Shown in pieces: positions 6,763 to 62,500 of a DNA stretch of 64,000 nucleotides; positions within the stretch are counted from its first letter, which is position 1; every line of letters starts with the position of its first letter. This DNA comes from Haliotis rubra. Taxonomy: Eukaryota. A program made the translations under genes and the position numbers. The notes beneath the pieces were generated by a model. That model was not told where the DNA came from and made no database searches. It was given only the letters and a program-made list of their open reading frames with translations. The stretch covers positions 372,001 to 436,000 of the forward strand of contig NW_025767319.1 in assembly GCF_003918875.1 (NCBI RefSeq), given 5' to 3'.

Positions 6763-6784
6763 TGCAGATTGTTTGTGTTGCCAG

Positions 6785-22260: not shown

Positions 22261-22292
22261 ATGGGAAAAAGTGCCAGTCTCATCTGTGGCAG
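22261..22292 (+). CDS. Candidate alternative first coding exon, MGKSASLICG(S), N-myristoylation-type
   Basis: tccATGG, cag|gtaggt donor, 32 nt = phase 2, matches the 46673 acceptor; MGxxxS plus Cys9. Confidence 0.6.
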
Positions 22293-25200
22293 GTAGGTGC
22301 AGTTGTCCTGGAAACAAACCATCAACATAGCTTCGAAAAATAGTATTATCAGTTATAATCATTATAATATGACATACCACATTAGCCATTGAGTCTCCAA
22401 TTAACATGATATCCGTACTGAAACCAGGAAATTAAATGTAAGATGTGTTTTTGTAAGTTTGAATGAGCTTTCATATACTTTTGATTGATACTGAGATGAA
22501 GACGTGTGGTAAGAAGCCGCTATGTACACAGGGTTGCCAGGTAGCTCCTGCAGATACTACCATGACTGAGGTGATATGTCAGGACATCACAGGGCTTTCA
22601 GTTTGTGACAAGGACAGAAGAGCCACAGATGCAACATGTTTCACAAATAAATGATACAAGCACCTACTATTACTGACGATGCCAACATACATTAAAAGAC
22701 TTGTCTTCATCATTCAATAATTCAAAAGAAGAAATATGGTGTATTTCATAAACCCTATGTCTTCTATGACATTTTGAATAGGTTTGGATTTTGAAAAAAT
22801 ATCAATCAGCATTTAATTAGAGATTTAATTCTTTCATCTACATCATACCTCTTATTATAAATTACAAAACAATTGATCAAATATGCCTTTGTTTAAGTGT
22901 GTTCAAGAGATACTTTAAGCCAATCAGCTTACAGAATTGTGTTCAGAGTAGCCTGTGAAGCTGTGTGTTTGATGTGGAGAAAGTATGCCATAACCTGTTA
23001 CAGAAGTGATTTGCACCGCAAGTCTTTGATAGGGTATTGAGGGTGTCTGCATCCATTACAGATTGTAGTAAGCTACTTGTCTTCAAGCCTCTAGGGCTGA
23101 CCTGGTAACAGTTGATTTAATGAAGGGGAAAATGTTGCAGTTAAGTGTAGGCTTGTCTTGGTAACAACACACAGTCTGTGTCATAATATTGGCTTATACA
23201 CTATAGTTATCACTGATTTCATATGTTCAAAGACAATATGGCCTTTTTTAAAATTAAAGTTATATTGTGTGTAGGATAATTTTGGGTTGAGTAATGCGAT
23301 CTAAATATATGATCAGTTTTCCCGTCCCTGTTTAACCATACATTTGTAGTAGACTTGCAGCCAGTGCTGTACTGAAAGTAAACTGATGTTACTTGGTAGT
23401 TAGTTTATAATGTTTGTTGAGTCATTCATTTAGAATGTGAGACTTGAAAGATTTGATCAAACATATTATGCTATTATAGTCAATGAAAGGGTTTTTTTTA
23501 TCATGAACAGTTCCATAGATGTGATTGTGTAAGACAGCCAACATGTCAGGGTGCTGCAGGGTACAGATACAACAGGCAAGCAGCAGCATTCCATCACTAC
23601 TCCCTGTACACCTATTGCATGGTCATACTTCACCAACTAGGCCTGGTCAACACAAACAGTTAGCCTTCCATCAAGCAGAAACTGGTTCATGGATGGCACT
23701 TGTGCAGAATAGTTGTCCACAAGTAGTATGTTTTGTCTTCAGTTGTGCTGGCTACCTCAGGTTTTTAAACATGTCATATGTCATTCAGGTTCACAGAGAC
23801 CTGTGTGTACTGACTGACCAGTATCCCACTGACAAAACTTGACTTCATTTGGAATCTATGGGCTTCAGTTAATAGACACATTCATTCTTTTTAACTGTTC
23901 ATTTCCCTTCTCACTTTAGACCCAGTGAGGAAAGTGGTTGCCCAGGTAGATATACCTTGTAGAAAGCACTGCATGACAGTTGAAGGACAAGTGATAAAGG
24001 TAATAAAATGGGCAACTTTAGAGATCAGTTGATTAGGGCGGTAGCATGGCCTATGTTGCACACCTGGTTTGGACGTCAGGTCAGCACTAGCAAAATATTT
24101 CTCTCCCCCTCTTTCTCTCTTCTCCAGCCCCCCCACCCCCCAGCCCCCTAACTTTAGTCTACTGGTTCAACAGTAGGTGGTCAAGAGATGGAAGGATTGG
24201 CGGTCATGGATGCAACAGGTGGTCATGCTGGATGGAGACTATTGGCAGTCAGGCGAAATGGAAGGATTGGCAATCATGCTGGATGGAGATTATGGTGGTC
24301 ATGCTGGTTGCAAGATGGGGACAATAGGTGTCATGTTAGATAGACACAATGGGCAGTCATGCTTGATGGGTATTGACATCATGATAGGATATATAGATCT
24401 TGTAAAGATATACCTGACTAAACTGGACTTCGGTTAATTTGATGGCTTAATTCTGTCACGGCAATGAGTTATTTGTGTGATATAAAGCTTTCCTGTTCAG
24501 TCCACCATTATTGTCCATGCTGTGTTACAGTGTTAATCCCTGTAGTACCAGTCATTCAGATATGACATGCTGAGGGCACCTGCCAGCTTTCATTTTAAAA
24601 AACAGTCAGGCTGACTTGTACTTATTTACTTCTCCAGCCATATACACCAGACTGATCTATAACAATATATATTGATGAATGCTGACCTATTAAGTGTGGA
24701 ATTCATGAATGAAATGATACTTCTTTGTAAGTGTAGCATGTTTAGTTATTTGTCTCTCACACATCTGACAAAGTATAATGAACAGATATATAATTGTGAG
24801 AAGCTGACATGTTGTTCCGTCTTTGCTATTTTAAGGACACACTGAAGGAAGGTTTTACAAAAGCGATCAGCATTAATGTTGTTTCCTTCACCTGACTTGT
24901 GAATCAATACATGTCAACTAGAATGTCGTAAATCAGGTTTTTATACTGCTGTTCAAATATAAAGAGACCCATTGCTATGTTTAGGTTAAGTCGATTTAAA
25001 AAGATTGAAATTACAAGTTAATGGTTACAATGGTTAAAGTGGAACTTGTGTCTGTGTCTCTGCCTGTTACAATGCACTGTGTGACTGTGATTGTTGATTA
25101 TCACCGGTTACTTTGTCTAATTGGTCGTTACAAAGTCATGATAAGGTGGTAACTGATACACTCCTTACATGCAATGATTCAACACACTTTACAATAAACA

Positions 25201-26408: not shown

Positions 26409-26530
26409 TTGGGTAGTGTTGTAGTTTGGGTAGTTGCAACAATAACTGGCTCCATTCTTGACATGGTGAGATCCCCGGATCCCATTATTGGTGTCCCTCT
26501 CCATCATATGGCTGGAGTATTACCAAGGTC
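26409..26530 (+). mobile_element. Highly decayed SINE of the same superfamily
   Basis: cccattattggtgtccc..catatggctggagtatt resembles the SINE core. Confidence 0.45.
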
Positions 26531-27342: not shown

Positions 27343-27391
27343 AGCTGGAATAGTGCTAAAAAGGGGTGTAAAACCAAACTCACTCACTCAC
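27343..27391 (+). mobile_element. 5'-truncated SINE tail
   Basis: gctggaatagtgctaaa...aaactcactcactc, 11-bp TSD tcatggtttat. Confidence 0.8.
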
Positions 27392-27438
27392 TCATGGTTT
27401 ATTGTGGTTGGCAAAATAGGTGAGGTTTATAATTTTTC

Positions 27439-27625
27439 CTTATCCTGACTCATGCTCTTTTGCTTGTCTTCTTCTTCTTCCGAACATAGTGGAACACTTG
27501 TATCTCCCTAATTGAAGCTCCCTTCAATGTAAAATCACTAATTAGTACTCACCAAGAGTTGCTTCCCTTTCCGAAATGCGTGGGAAAGGAGGCGCCACCT
27601 CTTCCCACATGCTTCACTCTCTCCT
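27439..27625 (+). repeat. DIRS left ITR
   Basis: Reverse complement of 33494-33680; about 8 mismatches in 187 bp by eye. Confidence 0.95.
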
Positions 27626-27820
27626 TCTTCGCCCAGTGAGCAGGATGTGAGAGCGCCTGTGTCTCCCTACACACTATATCCTTTGATTATTCTTATTTAG
27701 TTACCTCTTTTAGTCATCTATAGAGGTTTAGCTAGTATCCTTCAACATTATGTATTGATATTTATTCGTATTTCTGCTGTTTATTCACGGGACGCCGTGA
27801 TTGTTCAGTAGTTTACGTTG

Positions 27821-30175
27821 ATGAAAATCTGTACTGTTTGCAGGTTACGTTTTTCTGCTGCTGATCCGCATTTAATATGCCCTAGCTGTACTGCACCATG
27901 TTCATTTTCTTCACGTTGCAGTTACTGTAATAATTTGTCTAATTCTGCTTTTAACAAATATTTACTTTGCGTTTTGAGACGCGCAGCAGATAGGTCACGT
28001 AAGCAGAGTCTAGCCATGGCTGATACATCTGAACCCCTCGCCAGTCAACTGCTGTCGGACGACCCCCTCCCGTCTGGTGTTCCGCTAGAGTTACCCTCGG
28101 AGGAGAGGCGTGGGACGCAGTCCGCCGTCTCCAAGAAGCGTCCTGCATCCCCAGACATCCCGTCGTCGCAGCCGAAGACTAAGAGGGCTTCTACTTCAAC
28201 TCAACGCAGACTCCGCACCCCAGGGCAGCGTCTACCTCCAAGGGGAAATCGGCGAAGTCTACAAGGACTTTCTCAGCTGAGATTGTTCCGCCGCCAGAAC
28301 TGGGCCTGTATGATTATCAGCCGATCATCATACCTGATGTGCATCACAAGAAAGCGACCGGTGTCGGCAACAGTGGCGTCAGCGCGCAGATCTACACGCA
28401 GCCTGATGTACCAGCGCTGATGTCTGATGATCTTCCTGAGGGTCCCGTCGCTACCAACGCAGATAGGGCAGCAACTACATCTTCGCAGACCGTCCCAGAC
28501 GACCTGGTTCTTCAGATTATGAAGATGATGGAAGACCGCTACGGACTGGAGAGACAACCAGCCCAGAGCCTGAGCCTTACGAAGGCTCCAACGTAGACGT
28601 CACCCCAGAGGGACCCCCCCCATCAACGTAGCGGCTGCTACCAAGTCATCGCTGAGGAACCCACCTGCGCGAAGGACGTCACAGCCCACCTCTGCGAAGG
28701 ACCCAGATGTTCAGCGTTCGCGAAAGCCTTCGCGAAGGACATCTAGATCGTCACCTACCTCGGACTCCGATGATCAATGCTCACGAAGAGGTTCGCGAAG
28801 GAAGATCCTCTCATCCCCGGACTCTGACTCGGACCCCCAGCCTTCGCGAAGGTCAAGTCGTCACTCCCCAGGACCGGACTCAGATGAAGCTTCGCGAAGG
28901 GCACCAGTTACAGGCTCCAAGTCATCTTCGTCTAGAAGGTCATCGAGGGATTCCCCAAGAGCTTCGCAAAGCTATCATCGTTCACCACATAGATCTCCGC
29001 GAAGGTCACCATACAGACGCAGCTCGTCAGGCCGTTCTCCACGTCGATCTCCTCGCCGTTCTCCACGTCGATCTCCTCGTCGTTCACCTCGTCGATCTCC
29101 TCACAGGTCACCACATTGTTCGCCTCACAAGTCTTCACGGAAGTCCCCAGACAGGTCTCCATTGACGTCACCCTGCAGAGCTGTACAAGTATACAGGACT
29201 CCACCTCAGTCACCATCGGAAGAGCATCAACCTCTTATCAGCGATCCCGTTACAGAAGATGATGGAGGCATCATATACTCCGACGCAGAAATACGCTACT
29301 GGATGGTTAACAACCTGGACCTATCTTCACCTTCCAAGAACGGTAACCCGGCCCACACCTATCTCATGAGGGAGGACGGCGCGCAGACACGATCACCCTA
29401 CCTCCGATCGACCCGATAGCAGCGGTCCCACAGAATCTGGACACAGCCTTCCATAAAGCCACTAAAGCCCAGGCGCCGCACTTACCACAGTTCAACGCCA
29501 AAAAGTTCTCAGCCCATAATATGGACCCATTTTTCAAGGCACAATAAATCGACGATAACTTCAAAGTCATCAACGATGCCAAGACTAAGATGTACAAGAT
29601 AGACGACCGCAAGCTGGTTCAGATCGAAACCATGACAAGAAGAATGTTCTTCGGCCTTAACAGATCAAGAACGATTAATGAAACTCTCATCACCAGATTT
29701 CGAGATTCTACATCAGAAGACGACAGAATGATATACTCGGCCCTCCTTATGCAGAAGAAGGACCAGCAGTTTTTAACGGATCATCTTACATCAGTCTCCG
29801 CAGCGCTAACTCTGGCTCGTTGTCAAGGTCTCCTGCAGTTGGGGTGAACAGTTCACATCTTCACTCTACACAGCCCCGTGGTCTTTGCCGTCAATCTTCG
29901 CTGGAGGAATAGATAAAGTCTCTAAAGAAGTCACCAAGGATTCAAGGGAAGTCCTTATGATAAAGTTGATGTACACGCTAGCTAGCGTCATCAGGCAGAC
30001 ATCACAGAGATATTCAGGAAGATCAAAGTTTACTGGCTTACAGAAAGCACGGGACAGGAAGATGGCCGGTTCAAGAGGAGGAAAAGATTCTTTTCGTAAG
30101 CCCATCACGGCAACTACAGGGGGAGGATCTGGAAGAGGCAGAGCACCCAGAGGCTCCCGCAACTATAAGCGATGA
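27821..30175 (+). pseudogene. DIRS gag-like ORF1, frameshifted and with stops
   Basis: N-terminal Cys/His finger (CTVC..DPHLICPSC..CSYC), low-complexity middle, RG-rich C-terminus; split across several ORFs. Confidence 0.75.
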
Positions 30176-31914
30176 AAGGCGGTTTGAGCGACTGGAGTCT
30201 TCCACCCCAGCCGTTCCAGTACAACCATCACAAGTGGGTGGGCGCCTTCAACTGCACTGGGAGAACTGGGGAATTCTACAGGATCCATATGTCTCCAACA
30301 TCCTACAACACGGATATCGAATCCAACTACAGGCCATGCCTCCGCTTACAGTCAACCCTCACAAGTTCGACTTCCAGGCTCAACAACTACCAAAGTTACG
30401 AGAAGCTGTTTCATCTCTCCTAACCAAGCAGGCCATAGAAGTACTGGATCAAGTAAACATCGAACCAGGCTTCTACTCCCCAGTTTTCCTAGTGCCCAAG
30501 AAAAACTCCAAGGAAAAGTTCGACTCATCTACAACATGAGCACGTTCAGCAGAGATTATCTACGCCAAACCGTAGCGTTTGCATGATACATCTACCTCAA
30601 CTACTGCACCTAGTTTGTCCCATGGACTACATGGCCAGTATAGATCTGCAGGATGCTTATCTACATATCCCGATACATCCCGAATCCAGGAAATGCCTAC
30701 TGTTTACACTAGACGGGCTGCATTACCAATGGAGAGTACTGCCATTTGGAATATCATCGGCCCCCTGGTTGTTCAAAAGAGTAACGAAACCTATCGTCAC
30801 TTACCTACATCGTCAAGGGCTACGCAGTGCGTTCTACCTCGACGACGGGATTCAAGTAGATCAAGATCCACAGCGTCTCAAACTACAGTTAAACTTCATC
30901 ATCAAGCTACTAACGCAGCTAGGATGGTTAGTAAATCTACTCAAGTCGGACCTAGAACCTACGACAAGATCTGCAATTTCTAGGCGTTCGATTTCTCACG
31001 ACACAGAACCGTATCGTCGTACCGGAGGACCGATGGCTCAAGATCCAACAGACCATCCCACAAGCCTTACTCTCTCCGCTACCACTACGACAATGGCAGA
31101 GTCTGTTGGGTCTCCTCACGTCAGCCCAAGACATGAGAGTCAGAGGCAGACTACAGTTACGTCCGTTACAGGTCCTCATCAATGCTCATCTCGACGACCT
31201 ACAACCATTCAGTCTACCGAAGCACATCAGACCTCATCTACTATGGTGGACCAGGAGGTTGAATGTCTGTGAAGGCATCTATTTAACAGAGCCGGAATTC
31301 AAAACCCATCTCTATGTAGACGCGTCGCTCCAAGGTTGGGGAGCTCATCTCGCCAACTGGACGGCATCAGGGTTATTGAACCAGCAAGAGAGCAAGCTGC
31401 ACATAAACATGCTAGAAATGAAAGCAGTAATCAACGCCCTACTATATTGGAGCACCATTCTACAGAATGCGCATCTAATGATTCACACCGACAACTCAAC
31501 AGTGACGTTTTATATAAACAAACAAGGCTCAATGAGATCATTGAACCTATTGACTCTATGCTTTCAACTGTTCGATCTAATCGACGATCTCAACATACAT
31601 GTCAGAGCATGTCACATTCCTGGAGCCAAGAATGTACTAGCAGACGCACTCTCTCGGCCACATCTACCGTCACCGACAGAATGGATGCTCCATACAGAAA
31701 TCTTTGCACAGATTATCAAGGAAATAGGAGCTCCGCTAGTAGACCTATTCACCACTCGCTTCAACAATCAGCTAACAACATTCGTATCACCAGTCCTGGA
31801 TCCACAAGCGTGGGCAACGGACGCACTAAGCATATCCTGGGAAGGCCTCAACGCGAAGCGTTTCCGCCGCCAGCGCTAATTCCAAAGGTGTTACAGAAAA
31901 TAAAGTGTGTCTAA
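30172..31914 (+). pseudogene. DIRS reverse transcriptase - RNase H - truncated methyltransferase-like domain
   Basis: VGGRL..W, FYSPVFLVPKK, IDLQDAYLHIPI, LPFG, YLDD (30835-30846), VDAS..GWGA, HINMLE, TDN, N..ADALSR, DLF..AFPP; several frameshifts. Confidence 0.93.
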
Positions 31915-32961
31915 ACAAGAGAGGTTATTCAGCCAGAGCGGCGAAAGCAGTCACGCTTGCTTTACGCAGTTCTAGGCGCAACTTGTATGACGACAAGTGG
32001 CACAGTTTTGAGACATACGCTGTTAAAAAGGGATTTACAGCTAGAAATGCTACATATCCACAAGTGGCTGACTACCTTTGTTACCTACGACAAACTAAAC
32101 GTCTAAAAGGCTCGACATTGTCAACATATCTCGCAGCTCTAAGTTCAGTGATAACTATGAGAACGGGTGTCAAGTTAACTAAGACTCCAGAGTTACTGGC
32201 CTTGCTATGTTCATTCCGATTGGAGGATCAGAAACAGAGATTTCGCGCTCCAGCATGGGATCTAAATGTAGTGCTCCAACACCTCACAAGTGAGGCCTAT
32301 GAACCACTGGAATCAACATCGTTTGAATTTCTGACACAGAAAACATTGTTCCTGTTATCCCTAGCAATGGCAGCCAGAAATTCACGCTCTAGATTATGAG
32401 AAAACACGTTTCGATGACAATCAAAACATAGTGCATATGGGACTGCGATGGAACTTTATCGCCAAGAATCAATTGCCAGGTCAACCAGACAGATTATTCC
32501 ATATCCCTGCACTTTCCTCAATTTCTCGGACCTCATGATATGCTTGACCTATCATTATGCCCAGTGAGAGCACTCAAAATCTATCTACAACGATCCAAAA
32601 CGAGGCGACGACAACTCAAGCGGTTATTCACCCCTCTATCGACAGCGACTCAGACCGAAGTCTCTCGTACCACGATATCGATATGGATCAGAACTGTCAT
32701 ACTTCATGCCCAAGTAACAAGGCTGCAGGACTCAACCCTCCAAGAGCATCTACTCCCCATGAAATCAGAGCACTGGCTTCGACACCCGCTCTACACGGAA
32801 ATTGCTCGTTGAATACCATTATGGAGGGCTGCTTTTAGAAATCCGACATGGTGTTTGCTAACCACTATCTGAGGGATATCACCACCGAGGACGTCTCAGG
32901 TATTCACCATTTCAGTCCCATGGTCCTCGCACAGCAGTTGACAGTCCCTCGTAGACGATGA
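31905..32961 (+). pseudogene. DIRS tyrosine recombinase, frameshifted
   Basis: PAWDL..VL, KTLFLLSLA.AAR, LCPVRAL..Y, HEIRALAS, F.NHYLRD; in-frame TAG at 32836. Confidence 0.9.
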
Positions 32962-41461: not shown

Positions 41462-41544
41462 ATGAAGACAACTACGTCCCCTCCATTGGTGAGGATGATT
41501 TTGAGGTGTTTTACCTGTCATACGAACAAGCAGGTCCGAGACAG
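41462..41544 (+). CDS. Candidate alternative first coding exon, MKTTTSPPLVRMILRCFTCHTNKQVRD(S)
   Basis: gcagccATG Kozak context, cag|gtaagt consensus donor, 83 nt = phase 2. Confidence 0.6.
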
Positions 41545-43810: not shown

Positions 43811-43887
43811 ATGTATCTCATCAAACAGCTGTTTGACTGCTTCTACATCAAGTGGACGCCACATCATTTTCACAGTGATCGAGGAAG
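43811..43887 (+). CDS. Candidate alternative first coding exon, MYLIKQLFDCFYIKWTPHHFHSDRG(S)
   Basis: agaATG, aag|gtatgg donor, 77 nt = phase 2; TATA-like and CRE-like motifs about 300-350 bp upstream. Confidence 0.55.
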
Positions 43888-46672: not shown

Positions 46673-46814
46673 TGATGGGGGTTTCTTGTCGCACAACACA
46701 TCACGGGACACATATCCGGCACCTGCTCCAACCAAGGTTGTTAACTTCAACTCCTCAGAAGAGAACACTAGATCGGATCAGTACTATGATATTCCTGCAT
46801 ATGAAGAGTATATT
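46673..46814 (+). CDS. PTPN4: PTPN3/4 linker exon (DGGFLSHNTSRDTYPAPAPTKVVNFNSSEENTRSDQYYDIPAYEEYI)
   Basis: tttctttcag acceptor, att|gtgagt donor, 142 nt, phase 2 to 0; bridges the phases of the 12589 donor and the 63827 acceptor. Confidence 0.8.
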
Positions 46815-47922: not shown

Positions 47923-48555
47923 ACTGAAGTGCTGTGTTGGACTGTGTGCCTGAAGTGCTGTGTTGGACTGTGTGACTGAAGTGCTGTGTTGGACTGTGTG
48001 CCTGAAGTGCTGTGCTGGACTGTGTGCCTGAAGTGCTGTGTTGGACTGTGTGCCTGAAGTGCTGTGTTGGACTGTGTGCCTGAAGTGCTGTGTTGGACTG
48101 TGTGCCTGAAGTGCTGTGTTGGACTGTGTGCCTGAAGTGCTGTGTTGGACTGTGTGACTGAAGGGCTGTGTTGGTCTGTGTGCCTGAAGTGCTGTGTTGG
48201 ACTGTGTGACTGAAGGGCTGTGTTGGACTGTGTGCCTGAAGTGCTGTGTTGGACTGTGTGACTGAAGTGCTGTGTTGGACTGTGTGCCTGAAGTGCTGTG
48301 TTGGACTGTGTGCCTGAAGTGCTGTGTTGGACTGTGTGACTGAAGGGCTGTGTGCCTGAAGTGCTGTGCTGGACTGTGTGCCTGAAGTGCTGTGCTGGAC
48401 TGTGTGCCTGAAGTGCTGTGTTGGACTGTGTGCCTGAAGTGCTGTGTTGGACTGTGTGCCTGAAGTGCTGTGTTGGACTGTGTGCCTGAAGTGCTGTGTT
48501 GGACTGTGTGCCTGAAGTGCTGTGTTGGTCTGTGTGACTGAAGTGCTGTGTTGGA
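47923..48555 (+). repeat. 26-bp minisatellite (ctgaagtgctgtgttggactgtgtg[c/a]), about 24 copies
   Basis: Direct reading. Confidence 0.97.
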
Positions 48556-49217
48556 GTATTGTGTGTGTGAAGTAATGTGTTGGTCTATGTGCATAAACTT
48601 TGTGTTGAAACCATGTGCCTGAAGTACTGTGTTTGACTGTGTTAGAGGTATTGTGTCAGATTTTGCTTGTAGTATTGTGTTGTACATTGCTGTATATACT
48701 CAATAGGAATGTGTGTATCGCCTATGAGAACACTGTCGTAATGGAGGACAGCCCAAACTGAAGGAAGTATTGTTTAAGTGGACTGTGTCAGTCAACTGAC
48801 TAGAACAGAAAGATGACTGTTTAGAAGTTTGATCCTCATGGGATTTGTTTGGGCAACTCTACAAGTTTTATCTTTTGTTTGTAAAAGTGCAAGTCTTTGT
48901 TCTTTGTTAACCATTAAGAGTAACATGATTAACATACATACTGTTATAACCAGAGCAGTCATGATGAGAAATCATGTGTCTTCGGTTGTTATTGGAGACA
49001 CAGGATTTATGATTTTGTTGATTAGAGTGTGTGAGGGGGATGTGGAGCAGTCTGTAATTAGAGGATGAAGTTACAGTCAGGTTACAGACAGTTGATGAGA
49101 TTAGGCCGTTGACAGACAGAAGGTGAATCAATACTAGTGTATATCTTCATTAGTATGGCCTGTCAAGATACCTTGAAAACAGGCACAAGAAACCACGACA
49201 TGGTGCTACATCTGCAG

Positions 49218-49698
49218 TAGAATACAGACAGGGGACAGCTGGGGTCAGTCCATGGTGATACAGGTAGTGTAGAATACAGACAGGGGACAGCTGGGATCAG
49301 TTCATGGTGGAACAGGTAGTGTAGAATACAGACAGGGGACAGATGGGGTCAGTCCATGGTGATACAGGTAGTGTAGAATACAGACAGGGGACATCTGGGG
49401 TCAGTCCATGGTGATACAGGTAGTGTAGAATACAGACAGGGATATCTGGGGTCAGTGCATGGTGATACAGGTAGTGTAGAATACAGACAGGGGACAGCTG
49501 GGGTCAGTCCATGGTGATACAGGTAGTGTAGAATACAGACAGGGGACAGCTGGGGTCAGTCCATGGTGATACAGGTAGTGTAGAATACAGACAGGGATAT
49601 CTGGGGTCAGTGCATGGTGATACAGGTAGTGTAGAATACAGACAGGGGACAGCTGGGATCAGTGCATGGTGGTTCAGGTAGTGTAGACTTTAGACAGG
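49218..49698 (+). repeat. 52-bp minisatellite, about 9 copies
   Basis: tagaatacagacagggg recurs every 52 bp. Confidence 0.97.
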
Positions 49699-51498: not shown

Positions 51499-53240
51499 TA
51501 CAAAGCTGTGTTTCTACTAATATAGACGTCCCTTCAAGGGGTATATTCTTGTTCTGTTTCTCCATTAGGACACTAATACATGATTTAAGTACACTCCAGT
51601 GTACATTATTTTCAGTTCAAAATATAATATACGAATATTATTTTCATTTGTGGCAAATCATATGCCTTTCACATACCTACCCTTATTTTGGCAAAAATAG
51701 TGACTTTTGAAATATTTTGCCTTCTACTAGAAACTCCATGAAATGCGATGGGCCTGTCCTTTGTAACAACTGCATAGTTTATGCCAAATAAAGACTTGTA
51801 TGGTTCTTATTCATGGTAATAGTTGTGAGTTCATAAAGGACAGTCTTGATATGTTGAAATGACATATCAGGATATCAAGTGTTTGGTAGATGTGGTTGTT
51901 TGGTAAGTGTTTAGCTTAGTGTCCTATGTCCAAGCTAATACACGTATCACTGACATGATATGGCCTGGCTTGTGTGTTGTTGCATGTGATTCATTGTTTG
52001 GGGTCGGGTGTGATGCAATGTGAAGAATGTGAGCTCTGGGGATAGTACAGACATTTTATTTCCCTATAAAGGAGTCCACAATGAAAATGTGCTGCTGGTA
52101 TCACGCAATGCTGGCTGAAATAATAACACTGGGTTTAATGTGTGGATGGGGTTACTCAGGGATTGTCCTACTTCACTTGACACATATATGAACTGAAGTA
52201 CGGAGACAATTATGCTGAGCATTTGATGTCTTGTAAAGTTGTTATTTGAATGAGGATTGGCAGATTTCCAAGCCCAACCCACTGCTTTGTGTCAGGTTGT
52301 AGGCGGGTACACACAGGACAACCGATCCCCACCCGCATTGTCAGCTAGTGCAGATGCAGCAAACTTACATTAAGTCTGTATGTTCCTCGAGTCTCTTGTG
52401 TCTGGGACAATCATGGATATTTTGATTTTTGACTTTCTGAAGACATTGAACATATATGAGAAAACTTACCTTCAGAAGTTATTTAACAATAAAATGAGTC
52501 GAGTTCGCACATCTATGAAGATACAACATGAATTTTGTATTTTAAGCTATTATCTTGAAATTGTATCCAATTTCATGCCAATACATTAATAGTTTCCCAA
52601 TAGGACTACTGATGTAAGGCAGAACTTGATAGAAGTATTGTGACATTGTCTCTACGAGACCTAAAGTGTCTCTAGATTGTGAGTGTTTCTCTACTGCACA
52701 TGAACCCTGTATCCACAAGATCTCACCTTTACTGTCATCATGAAGGGCACCTCGAGGGGCTATGTTTGGACAGTGATAAATGTCCAAGGCAGCCACACAT
52801 TTACTTGTGTCTTCTGTGAATGAATGAACATTCCTTAATGTGTCCGGACCCGAGACTATCATGACCTAAGAGGGACTAATATCTACAGCCTTATCAGCCC
52901 GGCCCTTCACAGGGTTCTCGTTTACCCCAGTTCTAAGTGATCTTAAACCTCCTTTTTTAAAAACCTGATTTGAAACATTAACCATACACAAATCCAAACA
53001 TTAGCTTACAATAGTCCCTTAATTACACTCAGTCAGGTTTGTTTTTAGTTTCAAATCCCTCCACAGATTTCACTTGTTAAATATTGTTAGAATTTGTTGA
53101 CTAATCAGCCTAGATGTAGACAATGGAGACAGAAATAGTTTATCCTTGCCCTGTGCTTGCCAGCATGGATTCTAACAAAATTGCCCAGTCAGGCTGATGA
53201 CAAGCAAATTAACAAACCCTGATTAATTAGTCATTTCATT

Positions 53241-53303
53241 ATGAGGGTCCCAAGCTGGTGGTTTGAGGTGAGTGAGCTGGCTTACCTTGCTGACCCACAC
53301 CAG
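53241..53303 (+). CDS. Candidate alternative first coding exon with two in-frame donors, MRVPSWWFE(VSELAYLADPHQ)
   Basis: attATG; gag|gtgagt after 53267 and cag|gtgagt after 53303, both phase 0, matching the PDZ exon. Confidence 0.5.
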
Positions 53304-55295
53304 GTGAGTGGAGTTCAGCCAACACAAGCCACCCTTCCTTGTTCCCTCTGGTATTCAGGAGCAGGGTACACTACCTCGCTATAGCACACAGCAATATTCA
53401 CATGTGTTACTTCTGTAGTGTTGCTGCTGTGGGGAAAAATTGTTCAAATTGGACAATTAATAGTTCATGTGAATTTTTTTTTATCAGAGGCTTTGCTGTT
53501 AGCTTGGAAACATTTTGCCTTATAAAGAATATAGCGACACTATCAGTATACATTTAAAATCCTGATGTTTTCATGAATGAAATGTGGGCATTGAATTTGA
53601 CTTCATGTAGGTAAACAAGCCAGTAATGCATTATTGACAGATATAATTTTGGATATGTAGAAGCCTTTGTATGACATAACCTAAAAATAGCATTCAGGTA
53701 AGGAGTTAGGAGCCATACCACAGAGCCAGCGAGGTAGCGCACGTCACAGTTGGTGTATTGTGTTATGAATGTATGCAGGGTCGTGTCACTGGTCTACATA
53801 CAGGCCTGGTAGAGTGAGGCTGTCTCTTTAAACGCTAGACATCTACCAGGATCAGGGGCTCCGGTAGGGGCCTTACAACTCCACTGAAGCGGGGATCCCA
53901 GGCAGGATCATGAGACATAGGCAGAAGGGATTAGGACAGTCGGGATAGTCCACAACTGAAGCCTGACTGCACTGAACAGTGTCACCGATTACTGAGAGGA
54001 CTGCCAAAGACTGGGATATTGCTGTCTTATCAAGGGACCAAGCTTACTTGAACAGCAATAATGGAAGTACATCATTCTTTTCATTCCCCTAAAGTATTCA
54101 AATATGGTTTTGTGCGGACAGACCTGTGATGTATGGAATTGGACAGCTATAAGACTGTATGTATTCAGGGGTGCTTGAAACTGGATTCACTGAGGGTCAA
54201 GTGATTATATAAGTGTGGATCCGGAATGTGTGTTTCAATGGTGTAACCCACATTGACACTCGTTTATAGCAGAGTGCATTCCATGCATGACATCAGTAAG
54301 ACTAGAATCTGTCAAGGGGCCTGTTGAAGTCGTCTGTCAGCAATAGCAGTGAAGTTTTTAGTTGTAAAAGTCTGCAATAGCCCTGATCAGCTGCCTGGGC
54401 TTAAAGTCTGTGTCAGCGTAGTCATAGTGAGAGAGGTGTGCCCTGATTGTCTCATCAAAATGTACAAAGCTTTCCTGTAAAGTAAAAATGGCCTTACTTG
54501 ATTCAGCTGACTTTACAGAGTTTGTAACGGCTGGATAATTGTTTTCAAGAGGTGACTAGCTGGGGAAAAGTTGCCTGGACAGTGTGTTGTGTGATCCCCC
54601 CTGTTGTGGACTATACTGCTGATAGATTGGATACATTGGATGATACCCAAACCTTTCCACAATTCAGAAGAGGATTTTGTTTTGAATCGATAACAAGGTT
54701 TTCATAGCAGGAAGGGATATCCCTGTGACAGGACTAACCACTTGCTCTGCCAGATAATGCAGAGTCTATAAAAGGAATTACAGATATTTATTACACAAGA
54801 TAACGCGTCCCTTATTTTGTGTGACACTTGGCTAATGTGGGACACAAGTTAAGGAAGGTGTTTGTGAAAGATGTGGAGTGGTTTTAATAGAAAAGTTGTG
54901 TCATGAGAATGTGGGTGTTTGTGTCATCTCTTCTGACAACTGTTCAAGCATTGGAGGAAAACATAGCATGTCAACACAAGTAGATGTTTGACTTCAAATT
55001 GGATCAAGTAATTGACGTAATATGCATCAACTGGCAAACACAAGAGCTTGTTCAGCTTAAGAACAGGTTATGATTATCAACAATATTCAGGTTTACGTAT
55101 GTGATTACTCCAGATACAGCCATTGTTAACATACCTAAGGATTACTGTGTAAGAATATACCATCCAGGTGTCGAAGGTTGTACTGCTCAGTTTGAAGCAA
55201 GTGGGCAAAGGGATTGATTGTATGGTAAGAAAATATAATTTTTGGGTATATAGAAACATTTTAGAGAGGATCTTGTGGTGTCCCCACTTAAACTG

Positions 55296-56570
55296 ATGGT
55301 GGTCACAGAGATGGTGGTGTTTATGGCGAGTCCATTTGAGCGTGGATCACAGGCTTTTAGGAAGGAGCAAGTGTTCCAGCTTGTCCGATCCAGAAGTGTC
55401 AGACACTCTGTAAAAACTGGCAGTGGTGAAATTGTGACGACTCAAAATGGAGTTCAGCCCGAGTCTGCTGGGAAGAGAGGAGACACAAAGCCGGAAAACA
55501 GTGTGGTGCAGGAGAAAATTTCACCAAGAAGGGTTGCTAATGGTTCAGTCCAGACTGGTCTTTATTCTCGAAGTAGGCATAAAAGCTTCGAGCATTTACC
55601 CACCTCCCAAACTGTGCATGATGATTATAAGGTCCTACAGTCTTCCAGTTCTGTAGATTCTGAATTAGATAAAACAGATTCATCAGAACAATCTGATAAG
55701 AAAGTTTTACCAATGATACTTAAAAAGAAAATCAAAGTTATACGAGGGAAAAAGGGCTTTAGAATAATTTCAGGTGACAAGGGACGTTCATCTATTAGTG
55801 CTCAAAGACGCTCCTTATTAAGTGCTAATGAAGAAGTGCTCACACAAAGTGCTCAAAGCAGACCTGAATCAACAGTCTCTGTATCTGATCTCACTCATAG
55901 CCATGACAAGTCTGTTGCTCGACGTAGTAGTGATCATCCACATGTGCCAAAAACTACAACAGAAGTTGATAAAGGAAAAGGAACCAAGTCACGAGTTTCA
56001 TGGTTGGACCAGGAAAAACATCCTCAATTCCAGGCAAAGCTATTGGCTGAGCATCTTCCTCAGTCAAATGTTTTGCCAAAGAAAGACAAGGTGAAAAAGT
56101 CAGTTAAATTTCAGCTAGACAAAATAGAAAGTGATCAGTTAAAATACATTGGAGATAAAGTGTGTGTTGGACAGAGTGATAGTGAACTGATGCAAGTTCC
56201 CCGGGAAACAGGGTTCCAGCTGATAGGGGTTCAGAGAGATTCTTCAGTGGAGAGATTGAAGAGAGATGTAGAGAACCGACTACATGTGGATGGAAAGACC
56301 CATTCTGATGGAGGTGAAAAGAAGGAAAATAGTTTCACTGTGAAGCCTGTTGGAACATCCCAAAGATTGCTCAGATCTGGTGCCTCTTTTTCTGGTGTTA
56401 CAAAACAGTCTCTAACAAAGGAGAAGGTAGTTTCAGGATTTGTGCGTAGGAACAGCATCAAATCCCTTCAACCAGCCGAGCATCAGGACAGCAAGCTGGT
56501 TGTACGAAGATGTGTTATTGGAGGTGCCCTTACATTCAGAGTTGTTCAGCTTCCACCTGCATATGAAGGA
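55296..56570 (+). CDS. Large alternative exon (~425 codons, K/S/R-rich, probably disordered) in frame with the PDZ exon
   Basis: 1.3-kb stop-free non-repetitive ORF in AT-rich intron; gga|gtaagt phase-0 donor 36 nt before the ORF end; in-frame ATGs at 55296/55311/55323; TATAAAAGG at 54767. Confidence 0.72.
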
Positions 56571-59500
56571 GTAAGTGAGGGCTATTTCAGGGATGTTGGC
56601 AGATGAGTAGAACTTAAGAAGGAAGTGTTTTTTAACAATTACTTCTGTCAAGATAAATGCATTCATCTGGGAACACTTGAGCTCCTAGTGTTCTTTGGTG
56701 TGCTGTATGTAATTGATTGAAATATTTAAGTGACATGTTGTTATCTGCCATAAGACATGCAGGTTTGCCTGGAGTCATAGAAAACTGTCAGTCATTGCCT
56801 GTGTTCATTATAGGAACTACATTGACATTGTTCAACGCTAGCTAGTGTCTTTACATGTATGAAACCTCCAGACCAGCCTTGATATGGTCCAAGTTGATTT
56901 GACCAGTGTCAACTGATCAGTTATTTGAGGTATGATGGAAATGTAGGGGTTGAGGGAAGTTTAGTAAACTGTGGCCAGTGTGTGTCAGGCTGACTGTCAC
57001 CTCACTGACCTAGCTATACATCAGACTTAATGATACTAAAAACAATCAGTGTTTAAACTTAGCTTTGGAGGTTATTGTTTAAGATATGAAAGAAATATGT
57101 GTCTAGTTTCAAGCAGAGTGAGTGATGTTCAGTTTGTCCATGACACATGCCATGTTAATGTAGGCTGACACAAGCATGACACATGTTCTGATCATGCCCC
57201 ACCTCCAAGAGTGGACCTGCTGCCACACATTCACTCCTACCTTCAGTCACAAATACCTATGTTCCTACTTAATGTCTTTTTCATTCAGTGTGAAGTTTTT
57301 CTTTATGTAATTCAAGGAGTAATAGTTGAATTAGAACGTTCCATCTGTTCTGGATGATTAGGTCTGTTTCTTCTTGTGGTAAAGAATGTGTCTCCAACTG
57401 AACATTGCAGGTGGGCGTAAGCAGATGTGTATAGCAAATGTTACTCACCTTATACTTCCGTTTACATGGGCTTTCTATTGTCATGTTTTTATTAGTTCTC
57501 AGTAGCATTTACATAGAATACAAATGCTCAGTGCAGTGTAGTGGTAATAATTTGAAAGCCATGTTGAGTATACGTTAGCATTGTGTAATGTCAATGAGTT
57601 GTATGATACATGCCCTGCATGCAGGGCTTCTGTATGTCAGGGGTATTTATAGAGGGCATTAAGTAAGGTGAATCTGGTATGTCGGACATGCAGACAGGGA
57701 GATGGTTGCCGGATTACATGTGACTGGCTTTGTGCGGTTGAGGCTGGCGCCTCTCCCAGCTCTACCTGCACCGATCAACTATGTGGCAGGAATTCACCAG
57801 GTCAGCGTCTACATTCAGTGAAGGGACATTTATAAGCATGACATGCATGCAGATATATCATGTCATACACAGTGTTTTGCAGTCGAGCTTTATTTATGAT
57901 GCCTGTAAATATACCAGCTGAGGTCTCACATAAATGAAGGAAATAAATTCTGTCAGCTGAGGTTATGAACATGAAGTTTAATCTTCTTCATTATATTTTC
58001 CTCAAAGCTGTCTTTCCTGTTAGTTTGCACAGTTCAGATATTGCTCACTGAATTGATTTTTCTGAATGCTTCCTTTCCTATAAGCAGTGTTCTGCCTTGC
58101 AACCACAAAACGGCCTGCAAGAAATTACAGGGCTTAAAAGAGTTGACAAACTAACTGGAGAAGTCATGTGGGTTAGATAAACTGATTTGTGTGTGTAGCT
58201 GCCATTGGATGATAGGGCAAGCAACTTCAGCGGTCTCATGTCTAGCTTTCTCCATCAGTGGACTCGCAAAGGAAGAGTACTTTCATCAATGTCATTCCCT
58301 TGGCACAATACCTCTTCATCTTATGAGGCCAGATTGATAATAGAAGAAGGAAGCATAAAGCCTAGCATAGAGACTCCTTGAAAGTTTTATCACAGTTTGA
58401 TATTAAATGAGGACTCATTAATTCAATCACTATTCCCTACTTGTTCACACTGGCTGTTTGTATTTCGAGATGCCTCTAAAACTGGCAGATTATTGTGGAT
58501 TTAGGCCTGGACATTGATGATTGTCATAAATCCTGTTTAGGAGGACATGTGGACAGAGCTGGGACATCCCTTCCTTGTCACATCTGTCCCCTTGTCAGGT
58601 TGGCCTTGTCTGGCCACAGGACCACTATCATCACTGGACAAACACTTCGTCTTCCATTGTCTGAAACAAAAACTCGAAACATTTATGGTTAGCTTATGGT
58701 TGTTGATTCTTTCAATTAGGAGAAAGGTTTGCTAGTAATCCTTCATTTATTATGGGATTTGTTGGTCCATTGGGCAGCAACTTATTGTACATTGGTCAGT
58801 GAAGCCTCAGTGGATCTTCAGATGGTGACAGAATGGTCAGCCGTAGCCTGTATTTGAGTTTCACAATGGATGGTGGGTGCTGTTGGTGGGATTACCATGA
58901 TTGAAAGCCATTCAGCCAGGATAATGAGCGTATCAACACTCAGTAGTAACAGCTTGTTGATCATCGGACATAGTTCACAGTCACACTTAGGAAATCTATC
59001 ATATTCTGAGAGTTGGACATCCTGTCTTCTTACACATTTCAAAGAATAATGAATACAGACCCTTGAAAGAATGTTTTCAGAAGGGTTGTATCTGGACCTG
59101 CTCAGTGGCTGATGTTCGACCCCTTCATCTACAGTTAGTGTCTGTGGAAATGCAAACTTGTAATTAAATGTTTCCCAATTCAAGTTAATATAGCTATGAC
59201 TAATCTTTTCTCTTTCTTATGTTACATCTCAAATAAGAATGAAGATGCTTATTTTACATTATTGCATTGAATACAATGCTAGAATACCTCAAAATTTAGG
59301 ACAATAAACAGTTTCCCTGCCAAGGTATCTTAGTTTGGAATCCCAGATAAATCTGTGGCAACCTGTCTGTCTGTATACCTTTCTGGAGCATCATCATCAC
59401 CACTCTGTTCCTGCTTCTTTCACAACATTAGGCTGCCTGTTGGTACTTTCTACTGGTTGGGATAGGTTTTTGTGTTAATTTTTATAGGTAGAGTTGATGG

Positions 59501-62500
59501 TTGTTTTTTCAAGAAGTTATGAATATCTCTTTACAAGACTGTAACAGAAAAAAACCTGCCCTACTATTTATCCACTTTGCCTCTGGTGTTTACAAATCAT
59601 TATCAAGATGAATCATAAATTCTGTTAGATGGATTTTTTTAACATTGATCAGTATCATGGTGTTATATTGGTGAAGGTTTTAGAACCAGAGAATTGGATA
59701 TGAGATGAATATATGCGTGCAGTTTCTTTGCTGAGTATTGATAGAATTGAGTGTTCTTGTTTGAGATTCCTTTCCTTGGCCAGTGTTCAATATATTTTTT
59801 GTTAAGGTTGTGTTACTATGCCAACCGGATTGTCTTAATTTTCCCTGATAGAGTGGGCGAGTTAGTTATTGCCAAGAACAAAACAACTGGCAAAATGTTT
59901 TTGGAAACTGCTGCTTCAGAGTGGATCTTGATGTCAGTCTTTCCCATGGTTGATCAAGTAAGAAAATGTTGCATTTTTGCCCAGGTGATTTGTTGGTGTT
60001 TCTTGTATTTGTGATCACATGTTTGTGAGTAATGAGATAAATATCAACAATGCATGGGAATATCTCTGAAGTAACTCTTTCCGTGGAGTTTGTAAGCATG
60101 CCTTATCATGGAGTATAATTAGTGATGTGCACCTTGAAGAGGAAGTGAAACATTTTTCCTCATGCAGTTTGCCTGCTTTACATTATTTGTTTAGAGTTTA
60201 TATGCAGCGGGTCTTTCATTCCTCTATTTGAGGAATGTAATGATGTGTATTGAATTAGGTGGAAATGTGAACACACATTCAGTAAATGATTTGTGAGGTG
60301 ACAGTGAAACTACCTCCTGAACCGTGATCTCACATTCACACAGAATATGTCCACCCAATTCCAGCAACATTCCACTTATTATGAAGAATAGTTGGAGTCT
60401 AACCACCCGAGTGAGGCATGTAAACATGTTGGCCAGTAGTTTCTCCTGCCTGGCTTGTCTTCCATGGCCAGAGATGGAATGTAGGCATCTGTGTTGGTTG
60501 CAATTGATACAAATTATCCAGGTGTGACGGAATTCCCCATATTTTGACACATGAACACGTTGTTACAGTGCTTCTGAACTCAATGGCCTCAGATAATAGC
60601 TTCCAGTGTTGTCTGTCTATGAAAGAGATTTGCCTATAAGCTGTATACAAAATGAGTCTTTTCAGAAAAATGAATTTATAAAAACAAACTTGTTTAACAG
60701 GAACTTTCATAGCTTGAATCTATTTTAAGATCATGATGATGGCTTTTTATGTTAAAGTTTTAAAAGGCACACACAGTTGAAAGCCTTTGGGGTGTTATTT
60801 TAACAGAAGTAAAATGATTCAATTAGTTAAGTATTTGATTATGATTTTGTTTGTTGGGCTGCTGTACTGTGTTGAAAATAGGTACAGTGAAAAACGTATG
60901 AAAATAATCTTAGTAACATGTATGGATACATGCATGAATAAATACAGGTGTAAAGTTCAAACATTGTGCGATTTTGAGAATTTTCTACTTGCGGCATATG
61001 TGACATTTTGTCAGGAAATAGATAGGGTCCTGCATTTAAGTCGACAAAATAAGTCCCTGTTACTTCTTAATGAAACAGGTGCTTGTTGTCTGATGTGCCC
61101 ATCTCGTCCACTGCTTCTAGTTCACCCAGTCTAGCAGACATAGTGGGAAGGTTGGGTTGTGGACAAAACACAGGTTCAACATGCCATGTCAGTTCTTCCC
61201 TAGTCCTCAACTACAAATTGAGGACCTCATTACAAATATTTGAATGTTTAGCTGGCCAAGTGTTAAGGATGGGATGGCTATTTCACAATAGGGTCAACAT
61301 TCCTGTGAAAAACTAACCTGTTTCAATTGGTGGTATTACAGCAATTTCAGCATTTGCCTTTTGTGTGCAGCCAGGGAGTGAAACCAAGAGAATTCCATAA
61401 TTAAACAAACAAGCCGAATAGTTTCTTAAGCTCCACCAGATGCACTCACCCAAAGGAAGGTGGTTCTGTTTAGAAGAGGGTTTACAACCAGAAACATGTT
61501 GGTGGTCAGTAATGATATGTTATTATGAAAGGGAAACATTAATGATGGTTGTAGCAGGAATGTTATGTGAGCCTTGGTAGGAAGGAAGAAGTTGTAGTAG
61601 ACAGGAAGAAGGTATATTTAAGACAAGGCTGGAGTTGGTGCTAAACACATGCAGTATTTCATCTCAGAAGCCCACTTTAACTGATCATCTGTTTCGTTTC
61701 AGTGGCACATGGCATAAAGTATGAAATGTGTTTCAGTTAATTATTAAATTTGAGTTTAAAAAATGTATGAATAATTTTCTGATATGACAGTTTAAGGAAT
61801 AAAATGTGATGTATAGTTATATTGTTGGATTGAGATTGATTAAATGCTTTAAGTATTGATACATTCAGTAAAGCATCATTTCCAGGGTGGGATGAATGAT
61901 GTGTCAGTTACACCTGGTCATACAACATAGATATGCTGGTCTTTAACATCCCACCTTGGGGACATTCATCAATGTATAGTTGGTGTTGATTGGAGGAAAT
62001 TTAGTCGCTTTAATCCACTGAAGTGTTTCTCAGTCTGCTATGGTAGGCATAAACATATTGTTGAAGGAGCCGAATGTTGTGACAAGTCTGATTTATGCAG
62101 ATATTCAATTAAAACAGGTGACAACCAATCAGTAATAATAATGAATAATAACACCAGTGGTTTTGATTTAAAGAAAAGGAAACCTCTTGGAACGTCACAC
62201 AGGGTCAGTGGATCAGAGTTTGTGGGGATAGATAATATATACTTCTGATAGCTCTAGATTGTATCTGTTGTTATTAAAATCCAGCCATAAACTTTTAGAA
62301 TGATGAGAGCAAAGGGCTTGGGGTTGTTCTGTTGTCCCTGCTGCACAGACTCAAGTCTCCATAGGTGGTGGTTATCAGGCCTGATTTATGTGCACTGGGA
62401 GACAGGTACATTCCTTTCTCCTGAGACTTGACTTACACACTGATAAACACTGTCCATGCTGGTCATGTATTCAAGAGTGAAAGTCTGCCTGTATAATCAG

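What the first reader, a model, noticed from the sequence alone, without database searches (positions are those of the whole stretch)
22261..59957. Array of phase-matched alternative first exons that could replace the FERM domain with swappable N-terminal targeting tags
Seen: in the 34-kb intron (phase 2 needed) ATG-to-donor segments at 22261, 41462 and 43811 all end in phase 2. In the 17-kb intron (phase 0 needed) segments at 53241 (two donors), 55296, 57702 and 59895 end in phase 0. Several have good Kozak context or upstream TATA-like boxes. Known: the FERM domain localises PTPN3/4 to the membrane cortex, and PDZ plus PTP lie downstream. Inference: a multi-promoter system of variable first exons and shared constant exons, giving FERM-less PDZ-PTP isoforms targeted by myristoylation, Cys acylation or a long docking tail. 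Caveat: candidates were picked by eye and some short ones will match phase by chance; non-matching cases are listed under rejected.
Basis: partly seen in the sequence, partly recalled or inferred. Interest (0 to 1): 0.82.

Follow-up and report, generated by a model that had tools for sequence, protein, structure and literature searches.

The report
One real alternative exon, no array
Inside an animal PTPN3/4-type phosphatase gene, one long exon hidden in an intron is transcribed and spliced onto the PDZ exon in two related species, which would give a form of the enzyme without its membrane-binding FERM domain; the other seven short "alternative first exons" are no more than chance would give.

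Summary
The window holds the FERM-to-PDZ part of a PTPN3/4-type gene on the + strand. A full enumeration shows no phase enrichment. Intron A has 7 phase-matched segments against 5.9±2.4 in shuffles, and intron B has 6 against 4.5±2.2.

One candidate is real, 55296-56570. It is a 425-codon ORF (450 open codons; longest in 200 shuffles 255) with strong period-3 composition. RNA-like contigs from two samples of organism A and one of a about 7% diverged organism B cover about 53764/53859 to 56570 without a break. They then continue with 30 letters identical to 63827-63856, the PDZ exon. The acceptor near 55265 is not used, and an in-frame stop lies at 55251. So this is a about 2.8-kb alternative 5' exon that bypasses FERM, not a linker exon.

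The same transcriptomes do not cover 53241-53303 or 57702-57800. The ORF has no detectable relatives and looks disordered. Its 1.5-kb leader carries 27 upstream ATGs, so translation is unproven. The array is not supported; a single alternative-promoter isoform is a known kind of thing in PTP genes.

The parts
53764..56570 (+). Transcribed about 2.8-kb alternative 5' exon. The 5' limit is approximate: contigs start at 53764 in organism B and at 53859 and 54027 in organism A.
   Evidence: table 8. X1 contig covers 53859-56570, X3 contigs cover 54027-54915 and 55006-56570, and X5 contigs cover 53764-54213 and 54264-56570. None covers 53200-53763 or 56571-58903. A local GC peak of 0.52 lies at 53751-54000.
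53764..55295 (+). Leader of the exon. It holds 27 upstream ATGs, all opening uORFs of 29 codons or fewer. The in-frame stop TAG is at 55251-55253.
   Evidence: The ATG count equals the compositional expectation (28.9), so ATGs are not depleted.
55296..56570 (+). 425-codon ORF (open from 55254 to 56606) that ends in phase 0 at the donor. It is rich in S, K, R and V and is predicted to have no confident fold.
   Evidence: 450 open codons against a maximum of 255 in 200 shuffles. Period-3 chi2 is 55.8, against a maximum of 14.8 in 114 intron windows and a maximum of 50 in 5000 stop-free random ORFs. pLDDT 38. No Pfam family and no homologues.
56571..56576 (+). Donor GTAAGT used by the long exon.
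   Evidence: loose ends at 56570 in X1, X3 and X5.
63827..63916 (+). First PDZ exon, the shared acceptor (phase 0).
   Evidence: best PDB match is the PTPN4 PDZ domain, E 1.8e-5. The 30 loose letters of X1, X3 and X5 match only 63827-63856.
46673..46814 (+). Predicted linker exon of the FERM-containing form. It needs 2 nt from upstream and ends in phase 0.
   Evidence: Good acceptor and GTGAGT donor. No homology support and no reads laid here.
22261..22292 (+). Consistent with chance and not tested with reads.
41462..41544 (+). No support in organism A RNA-like runs. There is an unexplained signal in organism B runs somewhere within 41400-43900.
43811..43887 (+). Consistent with chance; same read situation as 41462.
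53241..53303 (+). Not covered by the RNA-like contigs.
   Evidence: table 2: depth 0 in X1, X3 and X5 at 53200-53599. Donor scores 7.6 and 8.8.
57702..57800 (+). Not covered by the RNA-like contigs.
   Evidence: table 2: depth 0 in X1, X3 and X5 at 56600-58799.
59895..59957 (+). Consistent with chance and not tested with reads.

Best explanation
The gene is a PTPN3/4-type (FERM-PDZ-PTP) phosphatase gene. In the intron that precedes the first PDZ exon lies one real alternative 5' exon, about 53.76-56.57 kb. It is transcribed from within the intron and is most likely a first exon driven by an internal promoter near 53.7 kb. It carries a 1.5-kb leader and a lineage-restricted 425-codon ORF. Its donor at 56570 is spliced in frame to the PDZ exon at 63827.

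If translated, the product is a FERM-less enzyme in which a disordered, basic and serine-rich tail replaces the FERM domain and the linker. That tail carries RVxF-like motifs (RVSW, KSVKF) and one PPxY motif (PPAY), and it sits ahead of PDZ and PTP.

Shown: transcription, the 56570->63827 junction in two species, non-use of any acceptor at 55254-55300, and the coding-like statistics. Inferred: the start site, translation, and any function of the motifs.

The seven short ATG-to-donor segments are what random intronic sequence yields and are not part of a system.
For:: contigs of X1 and X3 (organism A, two samples) and X5 (organism B, about 93% identical) match the genome without a break from 53859, 55006 and 54264 to 56570. 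Each then runs on for 30 letters. Those letters occur once in the window, at 63827. The flanking intron is uncovered in these runs, while the DNA run X18 covers all of it, so the runs behave as RNA.

X1 is one unbranched contig through 55254-55300, so no acceptor there is used at a detectable level. TAG at 55251 closes the frame upstream.

ORF statistics. In a sliding scan of the window, strong period-3 signal (chi2 of 30 or more) appears only at the FERM exons, the retroelement, a tandem repeat and this ORF; isolated windows elsewhere reach only 16-19.

The net length difference of X1 and X3 against the window is 12 nt, a multiple of 3 (table 8). The six variants shown inside the ORF are 3 synonymous and 3 missense, with no stop. 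None of the 12 deletions listed for organism D falls in 55269-56742, while 7 lie in the 1.4 kb before it and 5 in the 0.3 kb after it (table 4; the table is truncated).

Chance level of the short candidates.

Alternative-promoter short isoforms are well documented in other PTP genes (PTPROt, PTPRR, SHP1; PMC9900141).
Against: The runs are only guessed to be RNA, and contigs cannot show a true 5' end. An upstream non-coding exon joined at the AG at 53777-53778 is therefore not excluded.

The leader has 27 upstream ATGs, as many as random sequence, which argues against efficient scanning to ATG 55296.

Nucleotide divergence from organism D is not visibly lower in the ORF part than in its flanks (about 3.3% against 3.8% per piece). 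Word shares are similar too: 0.34 for the ORF against 0.29 for an intron stretch.

Third-position composition of the ORF (C 0.12) differs from that of the host exons (C 0.32).

No homologue exists to show conservation as protein. Whether the ORF is open in organism B was not visible.

The candidates at 22261 and 59895 were never tested with reads.
Confidence: 0.7

Rival explanations
1. One reading: a multi-promoter array of variable first exons (22261, 41462, 43811, 53241, 55296, 57702, 59895) is each spliced to constant exons, giving differently targeted FERM-less isoforms.
For: All segments exist with matching phase. One of them is real. Some have strong donors: 41544 scores 8.6 and 53303 scores 8.8. 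RNA-like runs of organism B hold 0.05-0.11 of the words of 41400-43900. No organism D differences are listed for 53200-53359, against 10 in the next 120 nt.
Against: Phase-matched segments are not enriched over shuffles or over the other phases. X1, X3 and X5 have zero coverage at 53241-53303 and 57702-57800. Organism A RNA-like runs hold 0.00 of the words of 41400-43900. The candidates share no sequence with each other. Apart from the long ORF there is no clear period-3 signal. A 9- to 33-codon open segment before a GT is expected 4 to 6 times per intron by chance.
Confidence: 0.06
2. The long exon is transcribed but gives no protein. Either it is an unproductive intronic-promoter transcript whose 1.5-kb, ATG-rich leader prevents translation of the ORF, or it is a very long internal 'poison' exon (acceptor about 53779) that brings stops into the FERM-containing mRNA. 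On this reading the ORF is a decaying or never-used reading frame.
For: 27 upstream ATGs. An acceptor-like tgtatgcag|G lies at 53778/53779, close to where the contigs start. No clear drop in nucleotide divergence over the ORF. No homologues. Third-position composition is unlike the host exons.
Against: A 450-codon open frame has a chance of about 3e-9 for the whole window, and the period-3 composition exceeds all stop-free random ORFs. The donor is in frame with PDZ. The exon and its junction are kept in a species about 7% diverged. Internal exons of 2.8 kb are rare, whereas long first exons are common (general knowledge). The organism B contig starts 15 nt upstream of the AG and matches the genome there.
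Confidence: 0.2
3. The 1.3-kb ORF is an ordinary constitutive linker exon of the FERM-containing protein, as in PTPN14/21-type genes. This was my first guess.
For: The ORF is large, disordered, carries a PPxY motif and lies between FERM and the next domain.
Against: The next exon is a PTPN4-like PDZ exon, not a PTPN14/21 layout. TAG at 55251 closes the frame. The candidate AGs at 55263-55268 have a poor pyrimidine tract, and only one gives phase 0. The contigs run straight through them into 1.4 kb of upstream genomic sequence without branching.
Confidence: 0.02

Closest known systems
Short PTP isoforms made from alternative or internal promoters (PTPROt from PTPRO, the 60-kDa and smaller PTPRR forms, the two-promoter PTPN6/SHP1; review PMC9900141)
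   Same: A second transcription start inside or beside the gene gives an mRNA that drops the N-terminal targeting part. It keeps the downstream constant exons with the catalytic domain. The new 5' exon is spliced to a normal internal acceptor.
   Different: The host here is a FERM-PDZ-PTP gene. I found no such isoform described for this gene type in the paper library. The new exon adds a large orphan coding region of 425 codons rather than a few residues. The start site itself is not mapped.
Variable-first-exon arrays (clustered protocadherins, UGT1A; from general knowledge)
   Same: The idea of several first exons, each with its own promoter, all spliced to one shared acceptor.
   Different: Those arrays consist of paralogous, long, conserved variable exons, each shown to be expressed. 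Here the candidates are unrelated to each other and are mostly 9-33 codons. Their number is at chance level, and only one is expressed.
Proteolytic removal of the FERM domain from PTPN4/PTPN3 (calpain or trypsin cleavage in the linker raises activity; general knowledge, not checked here)
   Same: The end product is a PDZ-PTP enzyme freed from FERM-mediated cortical anchoring.
   Different: Here the FERM-less form would be made at the transcript level and would gain a new N-terminal tail. No activity data exist.
PTPN14/PTPN21 linker with PPxY motifs (general knowledge)
   Same: A long disordered, serine- and basic-rich region with a PPxY motif ahead of the phosphatase part.
   Different: No sequence similarity was detected. 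Here the region is N-terminal, is followed by a PDZ domain and is not joined to FERM.

Membership tests
PTPN3/PTPN4-type gene (FERM-PDZ-PTP) | N-terminal band-4.1/FERM domain | tested here: met
   The exon at about 1945-2067 matches FERM of 4.1 proteins and PTPN3. The exon at 6779-6940 matches PTPN3 residues 276-322, E 7.9e-14.
PTPN3/PTPN4-type gene (FERM-PDZ-PTP) | A single PDZ domain after a linker | tested here: met
   63827-63916 matches the start of the PTPN4 and PTPN3 PDZ domains. Only the first PDZ exon lies in the window.
PTPN3/PTPN4-type gene (FERM-PDZ-PTP) | C-terminal PTP catalytic domain | not testable with these tools
   It lies beyond the end of the window.
Variable-first-exon array (protocadherin/UGT1A type) | Several first exons each shown to be spliced to the same constant acceptor | tested here: not met
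   Only 56570->63827 is seen. 53241-53303 and 57702-57800 are uncovered.
Variable-first-exon array (protocadherin/UGT1A type) | Variable exons are paralogues of one another | tested here: not met
   No similarity between any candidate region and the rest of the window.
Variable-first-exon array (protocadherin/UGT1A type) | More phase-compatible exons than chance | tested here: not met
   7 against 5.9±2.4, and 6 against 4.5±2.2.
Alternative-promoter N-terminally replaced PTP isoform | New 5' exon spliced in frame to a constant downstream exon | tested here: met
Alternative-promoter N-terminally replaced PTP isoform | Transcription starts inside the gene, independent of the upstream exons | tested here: inconclusive
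   Contigs end at 53764, 53859 and 54027 with no foreign letters, and there is no coverage upstream. Contigs cannot show a cap site.
Alternative-promoter N-terminally replaced PTP isoform | The new exon is translated | not testable with these tools
   Only indirect evidence is available: ORF length and period-3 signal against 27 upstream ATGs.

The most novel reading that the evidence does not exclude
This PTPN3/4-type gene may have more than one internal start. Besides the long exon at 53.8-56.6 kb, a second transcribed element in 41.4-43.9 kb (seen only as words in organism B RNA-like runs) and the invariant block at 53200-53359 might be further alternative 5' exons. Together they would make a small lineage-specific set of FERM-less isoforms with different N-termini. 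The long one would be a de novo or very fast-evolving 425-residue docking tail (RVxF-like and PPxY motifs) that retargets a PDZ-PTP enzyme.
Probability: 0.08. Interest if true: 0.55.

Novelty: new member of a known kind. Interest (0 to 1): 0.3.

Why it matters
If the long exon is translated, this animal lineage makes a PTPN3/4 enzyme that keeps PDZ and catalytic domains but swaps the cortex-anchoring FERM domain for an orphan disordered tail. That would change where the enzyme acts and what it acts on. It would also be an example of a large lineage-restricted coding exon recruited by an old, conserved gene.

It also matters for genome annotation. The exon has no homologues, so homology-based gene models will miss it.

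The wider lesson is negative. Short ATG-to-GT segments that match the phase of the next exon occur 4 to 6 times per 17-34 kb intron by chance, so they are not evidence of alternative first exons.

Tried and rejected
(1) I first guessed a PTPN14/21-type constitutive linker exon. The PDZ exon, the stop at 55251 and the unbranched contigs rule it out.

(2) Homology for the ORF all came back blank. I tried Pfam, the word search, the exhaustive search of 1.84 billion representatives and the ESM Atlas features (best score 0.80, at noise level).

(3) The AlphaFold single-sequence model had pLDDT 38, so a fold search was pointless and I did not run it.

(4) Rfam found nothing at gathering threshold over the whole window.

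(5) Self-BLAST of the candidate regions against the window gave no repeats, so there is no sign within the window that the long exon or its leader is a transposon copy. The rest of the genome could not be searched.

(6) Literature searches for a FERM-less PTPN3/4, Ptpmeg or PTP-FERM isoform found nothing specific.

(7) A PDB search for the linker exon 46674-46814 was blank.

(8) I tested 53231-53267 and 53231-53303 as in-frame cassette exons. Their lengths are 37 and 73 nt, which are not multiples of 3.

(9) My simple donor matrix (frequencies from memory) gives the real donors at 12589, 46814 and 56570 scores of only 1-2. A high donor score is therefore not a useful filter here.
Full report
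**What the window is.** The + strand carries the middle of an animal FERM-PDZ phosphatase gene.
- The exon at about 1945-2067 matches the FERM domains of 4.1 proteins and PTPN3.
- The exon at 6779-6940 matches PTPN3 residues 276-322 with E 7.9e-14.
- Further FERM-C exons can be read at about 2471-2557, 4120-4209 and 5489-5554.
- 63827-63916 encodes the start of a PDZ domain, best matched by PTPN4.
- Between these lie a predicted linker exon ending at 12589 (TGA|GTGAGT, 2 nt over) and a predicted exon at 46673-46814. The only frame of that exon compatible with the PDZ exon takes 2 nt from upstream and ends in phase 0.

The linker exons themselves have no homology or read support here.

**The observation.** All eight ATG-to-GT segments exist exactly as listed, are open and end in the stated phase.

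**Is it more than chance?** I listed every ATG-to-donor open segment in both introns, scoring donors with a simple matrix whose frequencies come from memory.
- At the level of ATG-donor pairs, the needed phase makes up 31% (intron A) and 35% (intron B) of all pairs.
- At the level of distinct donors, the needed phase makes up 30-36% in intron A. In intron B it makes up 42-50%, but phase 0 is just as over-represented in intron A, where it is the wrong phase.
- I compared against 200 dinucleotide-preserving shuffles made in 2-kb blocks. Intron A has 7 phase-2 segments against 5.9±2.4 (P=0.38). Intron B has 6 phase-0 segments against 4.5±2.2 (P=0.28).

Kozak context is also ordinary.

**The exception: 55296-56570.** The frame is open for 450 codons (55254-56606).
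- In 200 shuffles of the window the longest open frame averaged 160 codons and never exceeded 255. The analytic chance for the whole window is about 3e-9.
- Base composition by codon position gives chi2 55.8. The maximum was 14.8 in 114 intron windows of the same length and 50.0 in 5000 random ORFs built without stops. The signal is therefore more than stop avoidance.
- In a sliding scan of the whole window, strong period-3 signal (chi2 of 30 or more) appears only at the FERM exons, the retroelement, a tandem repeat with a period divisible by 3, and this ORF. Isolated windows elsewhere reach only 16-19.

**Transcript evidence.** The run search found small RNA-like contig sets that hold the ORF. 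Organism A runs hold a 0.76 share of its words. Organism B runs hold 0.09, which fits about 7% divergence. The results were:
- X18 covers the whole stretch, as DNA would.
- X1, X3 and X5 cover only about 53764/53859/54027 to 56570, plus one small X5 piece at 58904-59137.
- All three contigs stop matching exactly at 56570 and run on with TCTAATGGGAATGGTTATGCTGATGGACAT. That sequence occurs once in the window, at 63827-63856.
These runs behave as RNA.
- The overhang is exactly 30 letters (k-1 for 31-mer contigs) in all three runs. This is what a branch at the start of the PDZ exon would give, meaning that another upstream partner or unspliced RNA is present too. That step is inference from how such assemblers work.

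**First exon or internal exon?** I had first guessed a constitutive linker exon of the PTPN14/21 kind. That is wrong for three reasons:
- The frame is closed by TAG at 55251.
- The AGs at 55263-55268 have a poor pyrimidine tract.
- The contigs run through them without branching into 1.4-1.5 kb of collinear genomic sequence.

The contigs simply end at 53764 (B), 53859 and 54027 (A) with no foreign letters, and nothing upstream is covered. A local GC peak (0.52) sits at 53751-54000. This fits a transcription start near 53.7 kb, making this a 2.8-kb first exon. Long first exons are common, while 2.8-kb internal exons are rare (general knowledge). Contig ends are not cap sites, however, and an acceptor-like tgtatgcag|G lies at 53778/53779. 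An upstream non-coding exon or inclusion as a poison exon therefore cannot be excluded.

**Is the ORF translated?**

Evidence in favour:
- The ORF statistics above and the in-frame join to PDZ.
- The exon and its junction are retained in a diverged species.
- X1 and X3 differ from the window by a net 12 nt, a multiple of 3 (table 8).
- The six variants shown inside the ORF are 3 synonymous and 3 missense, with no stop.
- The 12 deletions listed for organism D skip 55269-56742, while hitting the 1.4 kb before it 7 times and the 0.3 kb after it 5 times (table 4). That table is truncated and insertions are not shown, so this is only suggestive.

Evidence against:
- The leader 53764-55295 holds 27 ATGs, as many as composition predicts (28.9), each opening a short uORF.
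- Divergence from organism D is not clearly lower over the ORF than over its flanks.
- Third positions are C-poor (0.12), unlike the host exons (0.32).
- Contig depths step up toward the ORF in X3 and X5, which could mean additional, closer start sites. Contig depth is too crude to lean on.

**What the protein would be.** It would have 425 residues, with S 13%, V 11%, K 10% and R 7%, and mean hydropathy -0.73.
- It has no Pfam family and no relative in the word search or among 1.84 billion representatives.
- The Atlas feature hits are at noise level.
- The single-sequence AlphaFold pLDDT is 38.
- It carries two RVxF-like motifs (RVSW, KSVKF), one PPxY motif (PPAY, five residues before the junction) and a basic cluster.

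These short motifs are leads only. The exon is restricted to this group of species as far as can be seen; DNA words were found in organisms A, B, C and D.

**The other candidates.**
- 53241-53303 and 57702-57800 lie in the laid stretch and have zero coverage in X1, X3 and X5. Contigs show presence, not absence.
- For 41462 and 43811, I used the second run search on 41400-43900. Organism A RNA-like runs hold 0.00 of its words. Organism B RNA-like runs from four studies hold 0.05-0.11, as much as they hold of the fully covered long exon. Something in that stretch is probably transcribed in organism B, or a short piece is perfectly conserved. There is no ORF of 70 aa or more there, no Rfam hit and no repeat within the window.
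- 22261 and 59895 were not tested with reads.
- No organism D differences are listed for 53200-53359, against 10 in the next 120 nt. Taken alone that has a chance of about 0.01, but it is one of many windows and the table is truncated. The block cannot be an in-frame cassette exon.

**Comparison with what is known.** N-terminally replaced or shortened PTP isoforms from alternative promoters are well documented for PTPRO (PTPROt), PTPRR and PTPN6 (PMC9900141). I found no report of such a form for PTPN3/4, Ptpmeg or PTP-FERM in the paper library, which is far from exhaustive. The protocadherin/UGT1A type of variable-exon array fails its defining tests here: only one exon is expressed, the candidates are not paralogous, and there is no enrichment.

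**Verdict.** The array is not a real feature. One member of it is a real alternative 5' exon with a large orphan ORF. That makes it a new member of a known kind, of modest interest.

Noticed in passing
window 41400-43900: RNA-like runs of organism B from four studies hold 0.05-0.11 of the words of this intronic stretch. That is as much as they hold of the fully transcribed long exon. Organism A RNA-like runs hold 0.00. Possibly a transcribed non-coding element or a very conserved short piece; not localised.
   Followed up: partly
window 27800-32400 (+): A degenerate retroelement inside the 34-kb intron. It is GC-rich (0.48-0.53) and has overlapping, frame-shifted ORFs with reverse transcriptase (RVT_1, E 8.5e-14) and RNase H (RT_RNaseH, E 4.7e-9) domains. 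I only described it.
   Followed up: partly
window 44906-45840; 47924-48642; 49217-49500: Three minisatellites flank the exon at 46673: 30 nt x 31 copies, 26 nt (52 nt) x about 28 copies, and 52 nt x 5.5 or more copies. The first two produce spurious 200-275 aa ORFs on both strands. The 30-nt array also gives a strong period-3 signal.
   Followed up: partly
window 53200-53359: No differences from organism D are listed over 160 nt, against 10 in the next 120 nt (table 3, truncated). RNA-like contigs do not cover it.
   Followed up: partly
window 59077-59123 and 58904-59137: Several short organism D contigs pile up on about 35-45 nt here with foreign sequence on both sides, and one organism B RNA-like contig covers 58904-59137. 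This looks like a short dispersed repeat.
   Followed up: no
window about 5998-6217, 6608-6803, 14088-14267: Three copies of a short element that translates to similar strings (…VVKAL.RHAEDPGS.PH.GT.CE.HFWCP…) in the stop-to-stop ORF list. Probably a tRNA-related SINE. Rfam found nothing at gathering threshold.
   Followed up: no
window 56610-56650: Organism D lacks 39 nt just after the stop codon that ends the long open frame (56604-56606). Several more indels follow within 450 nt, in contrast to the deletion-free ORF (tables 4, 5).
   Followed up: no
window 55296-56570 versus the host exons: Third codon positions of the long ORF are C-poor (0.12) and A/T-rich. The FERM, linker and PDZ exons have C 0.32 at third positions. 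This fits a younger or less constrained coding region.
   Followed up: no
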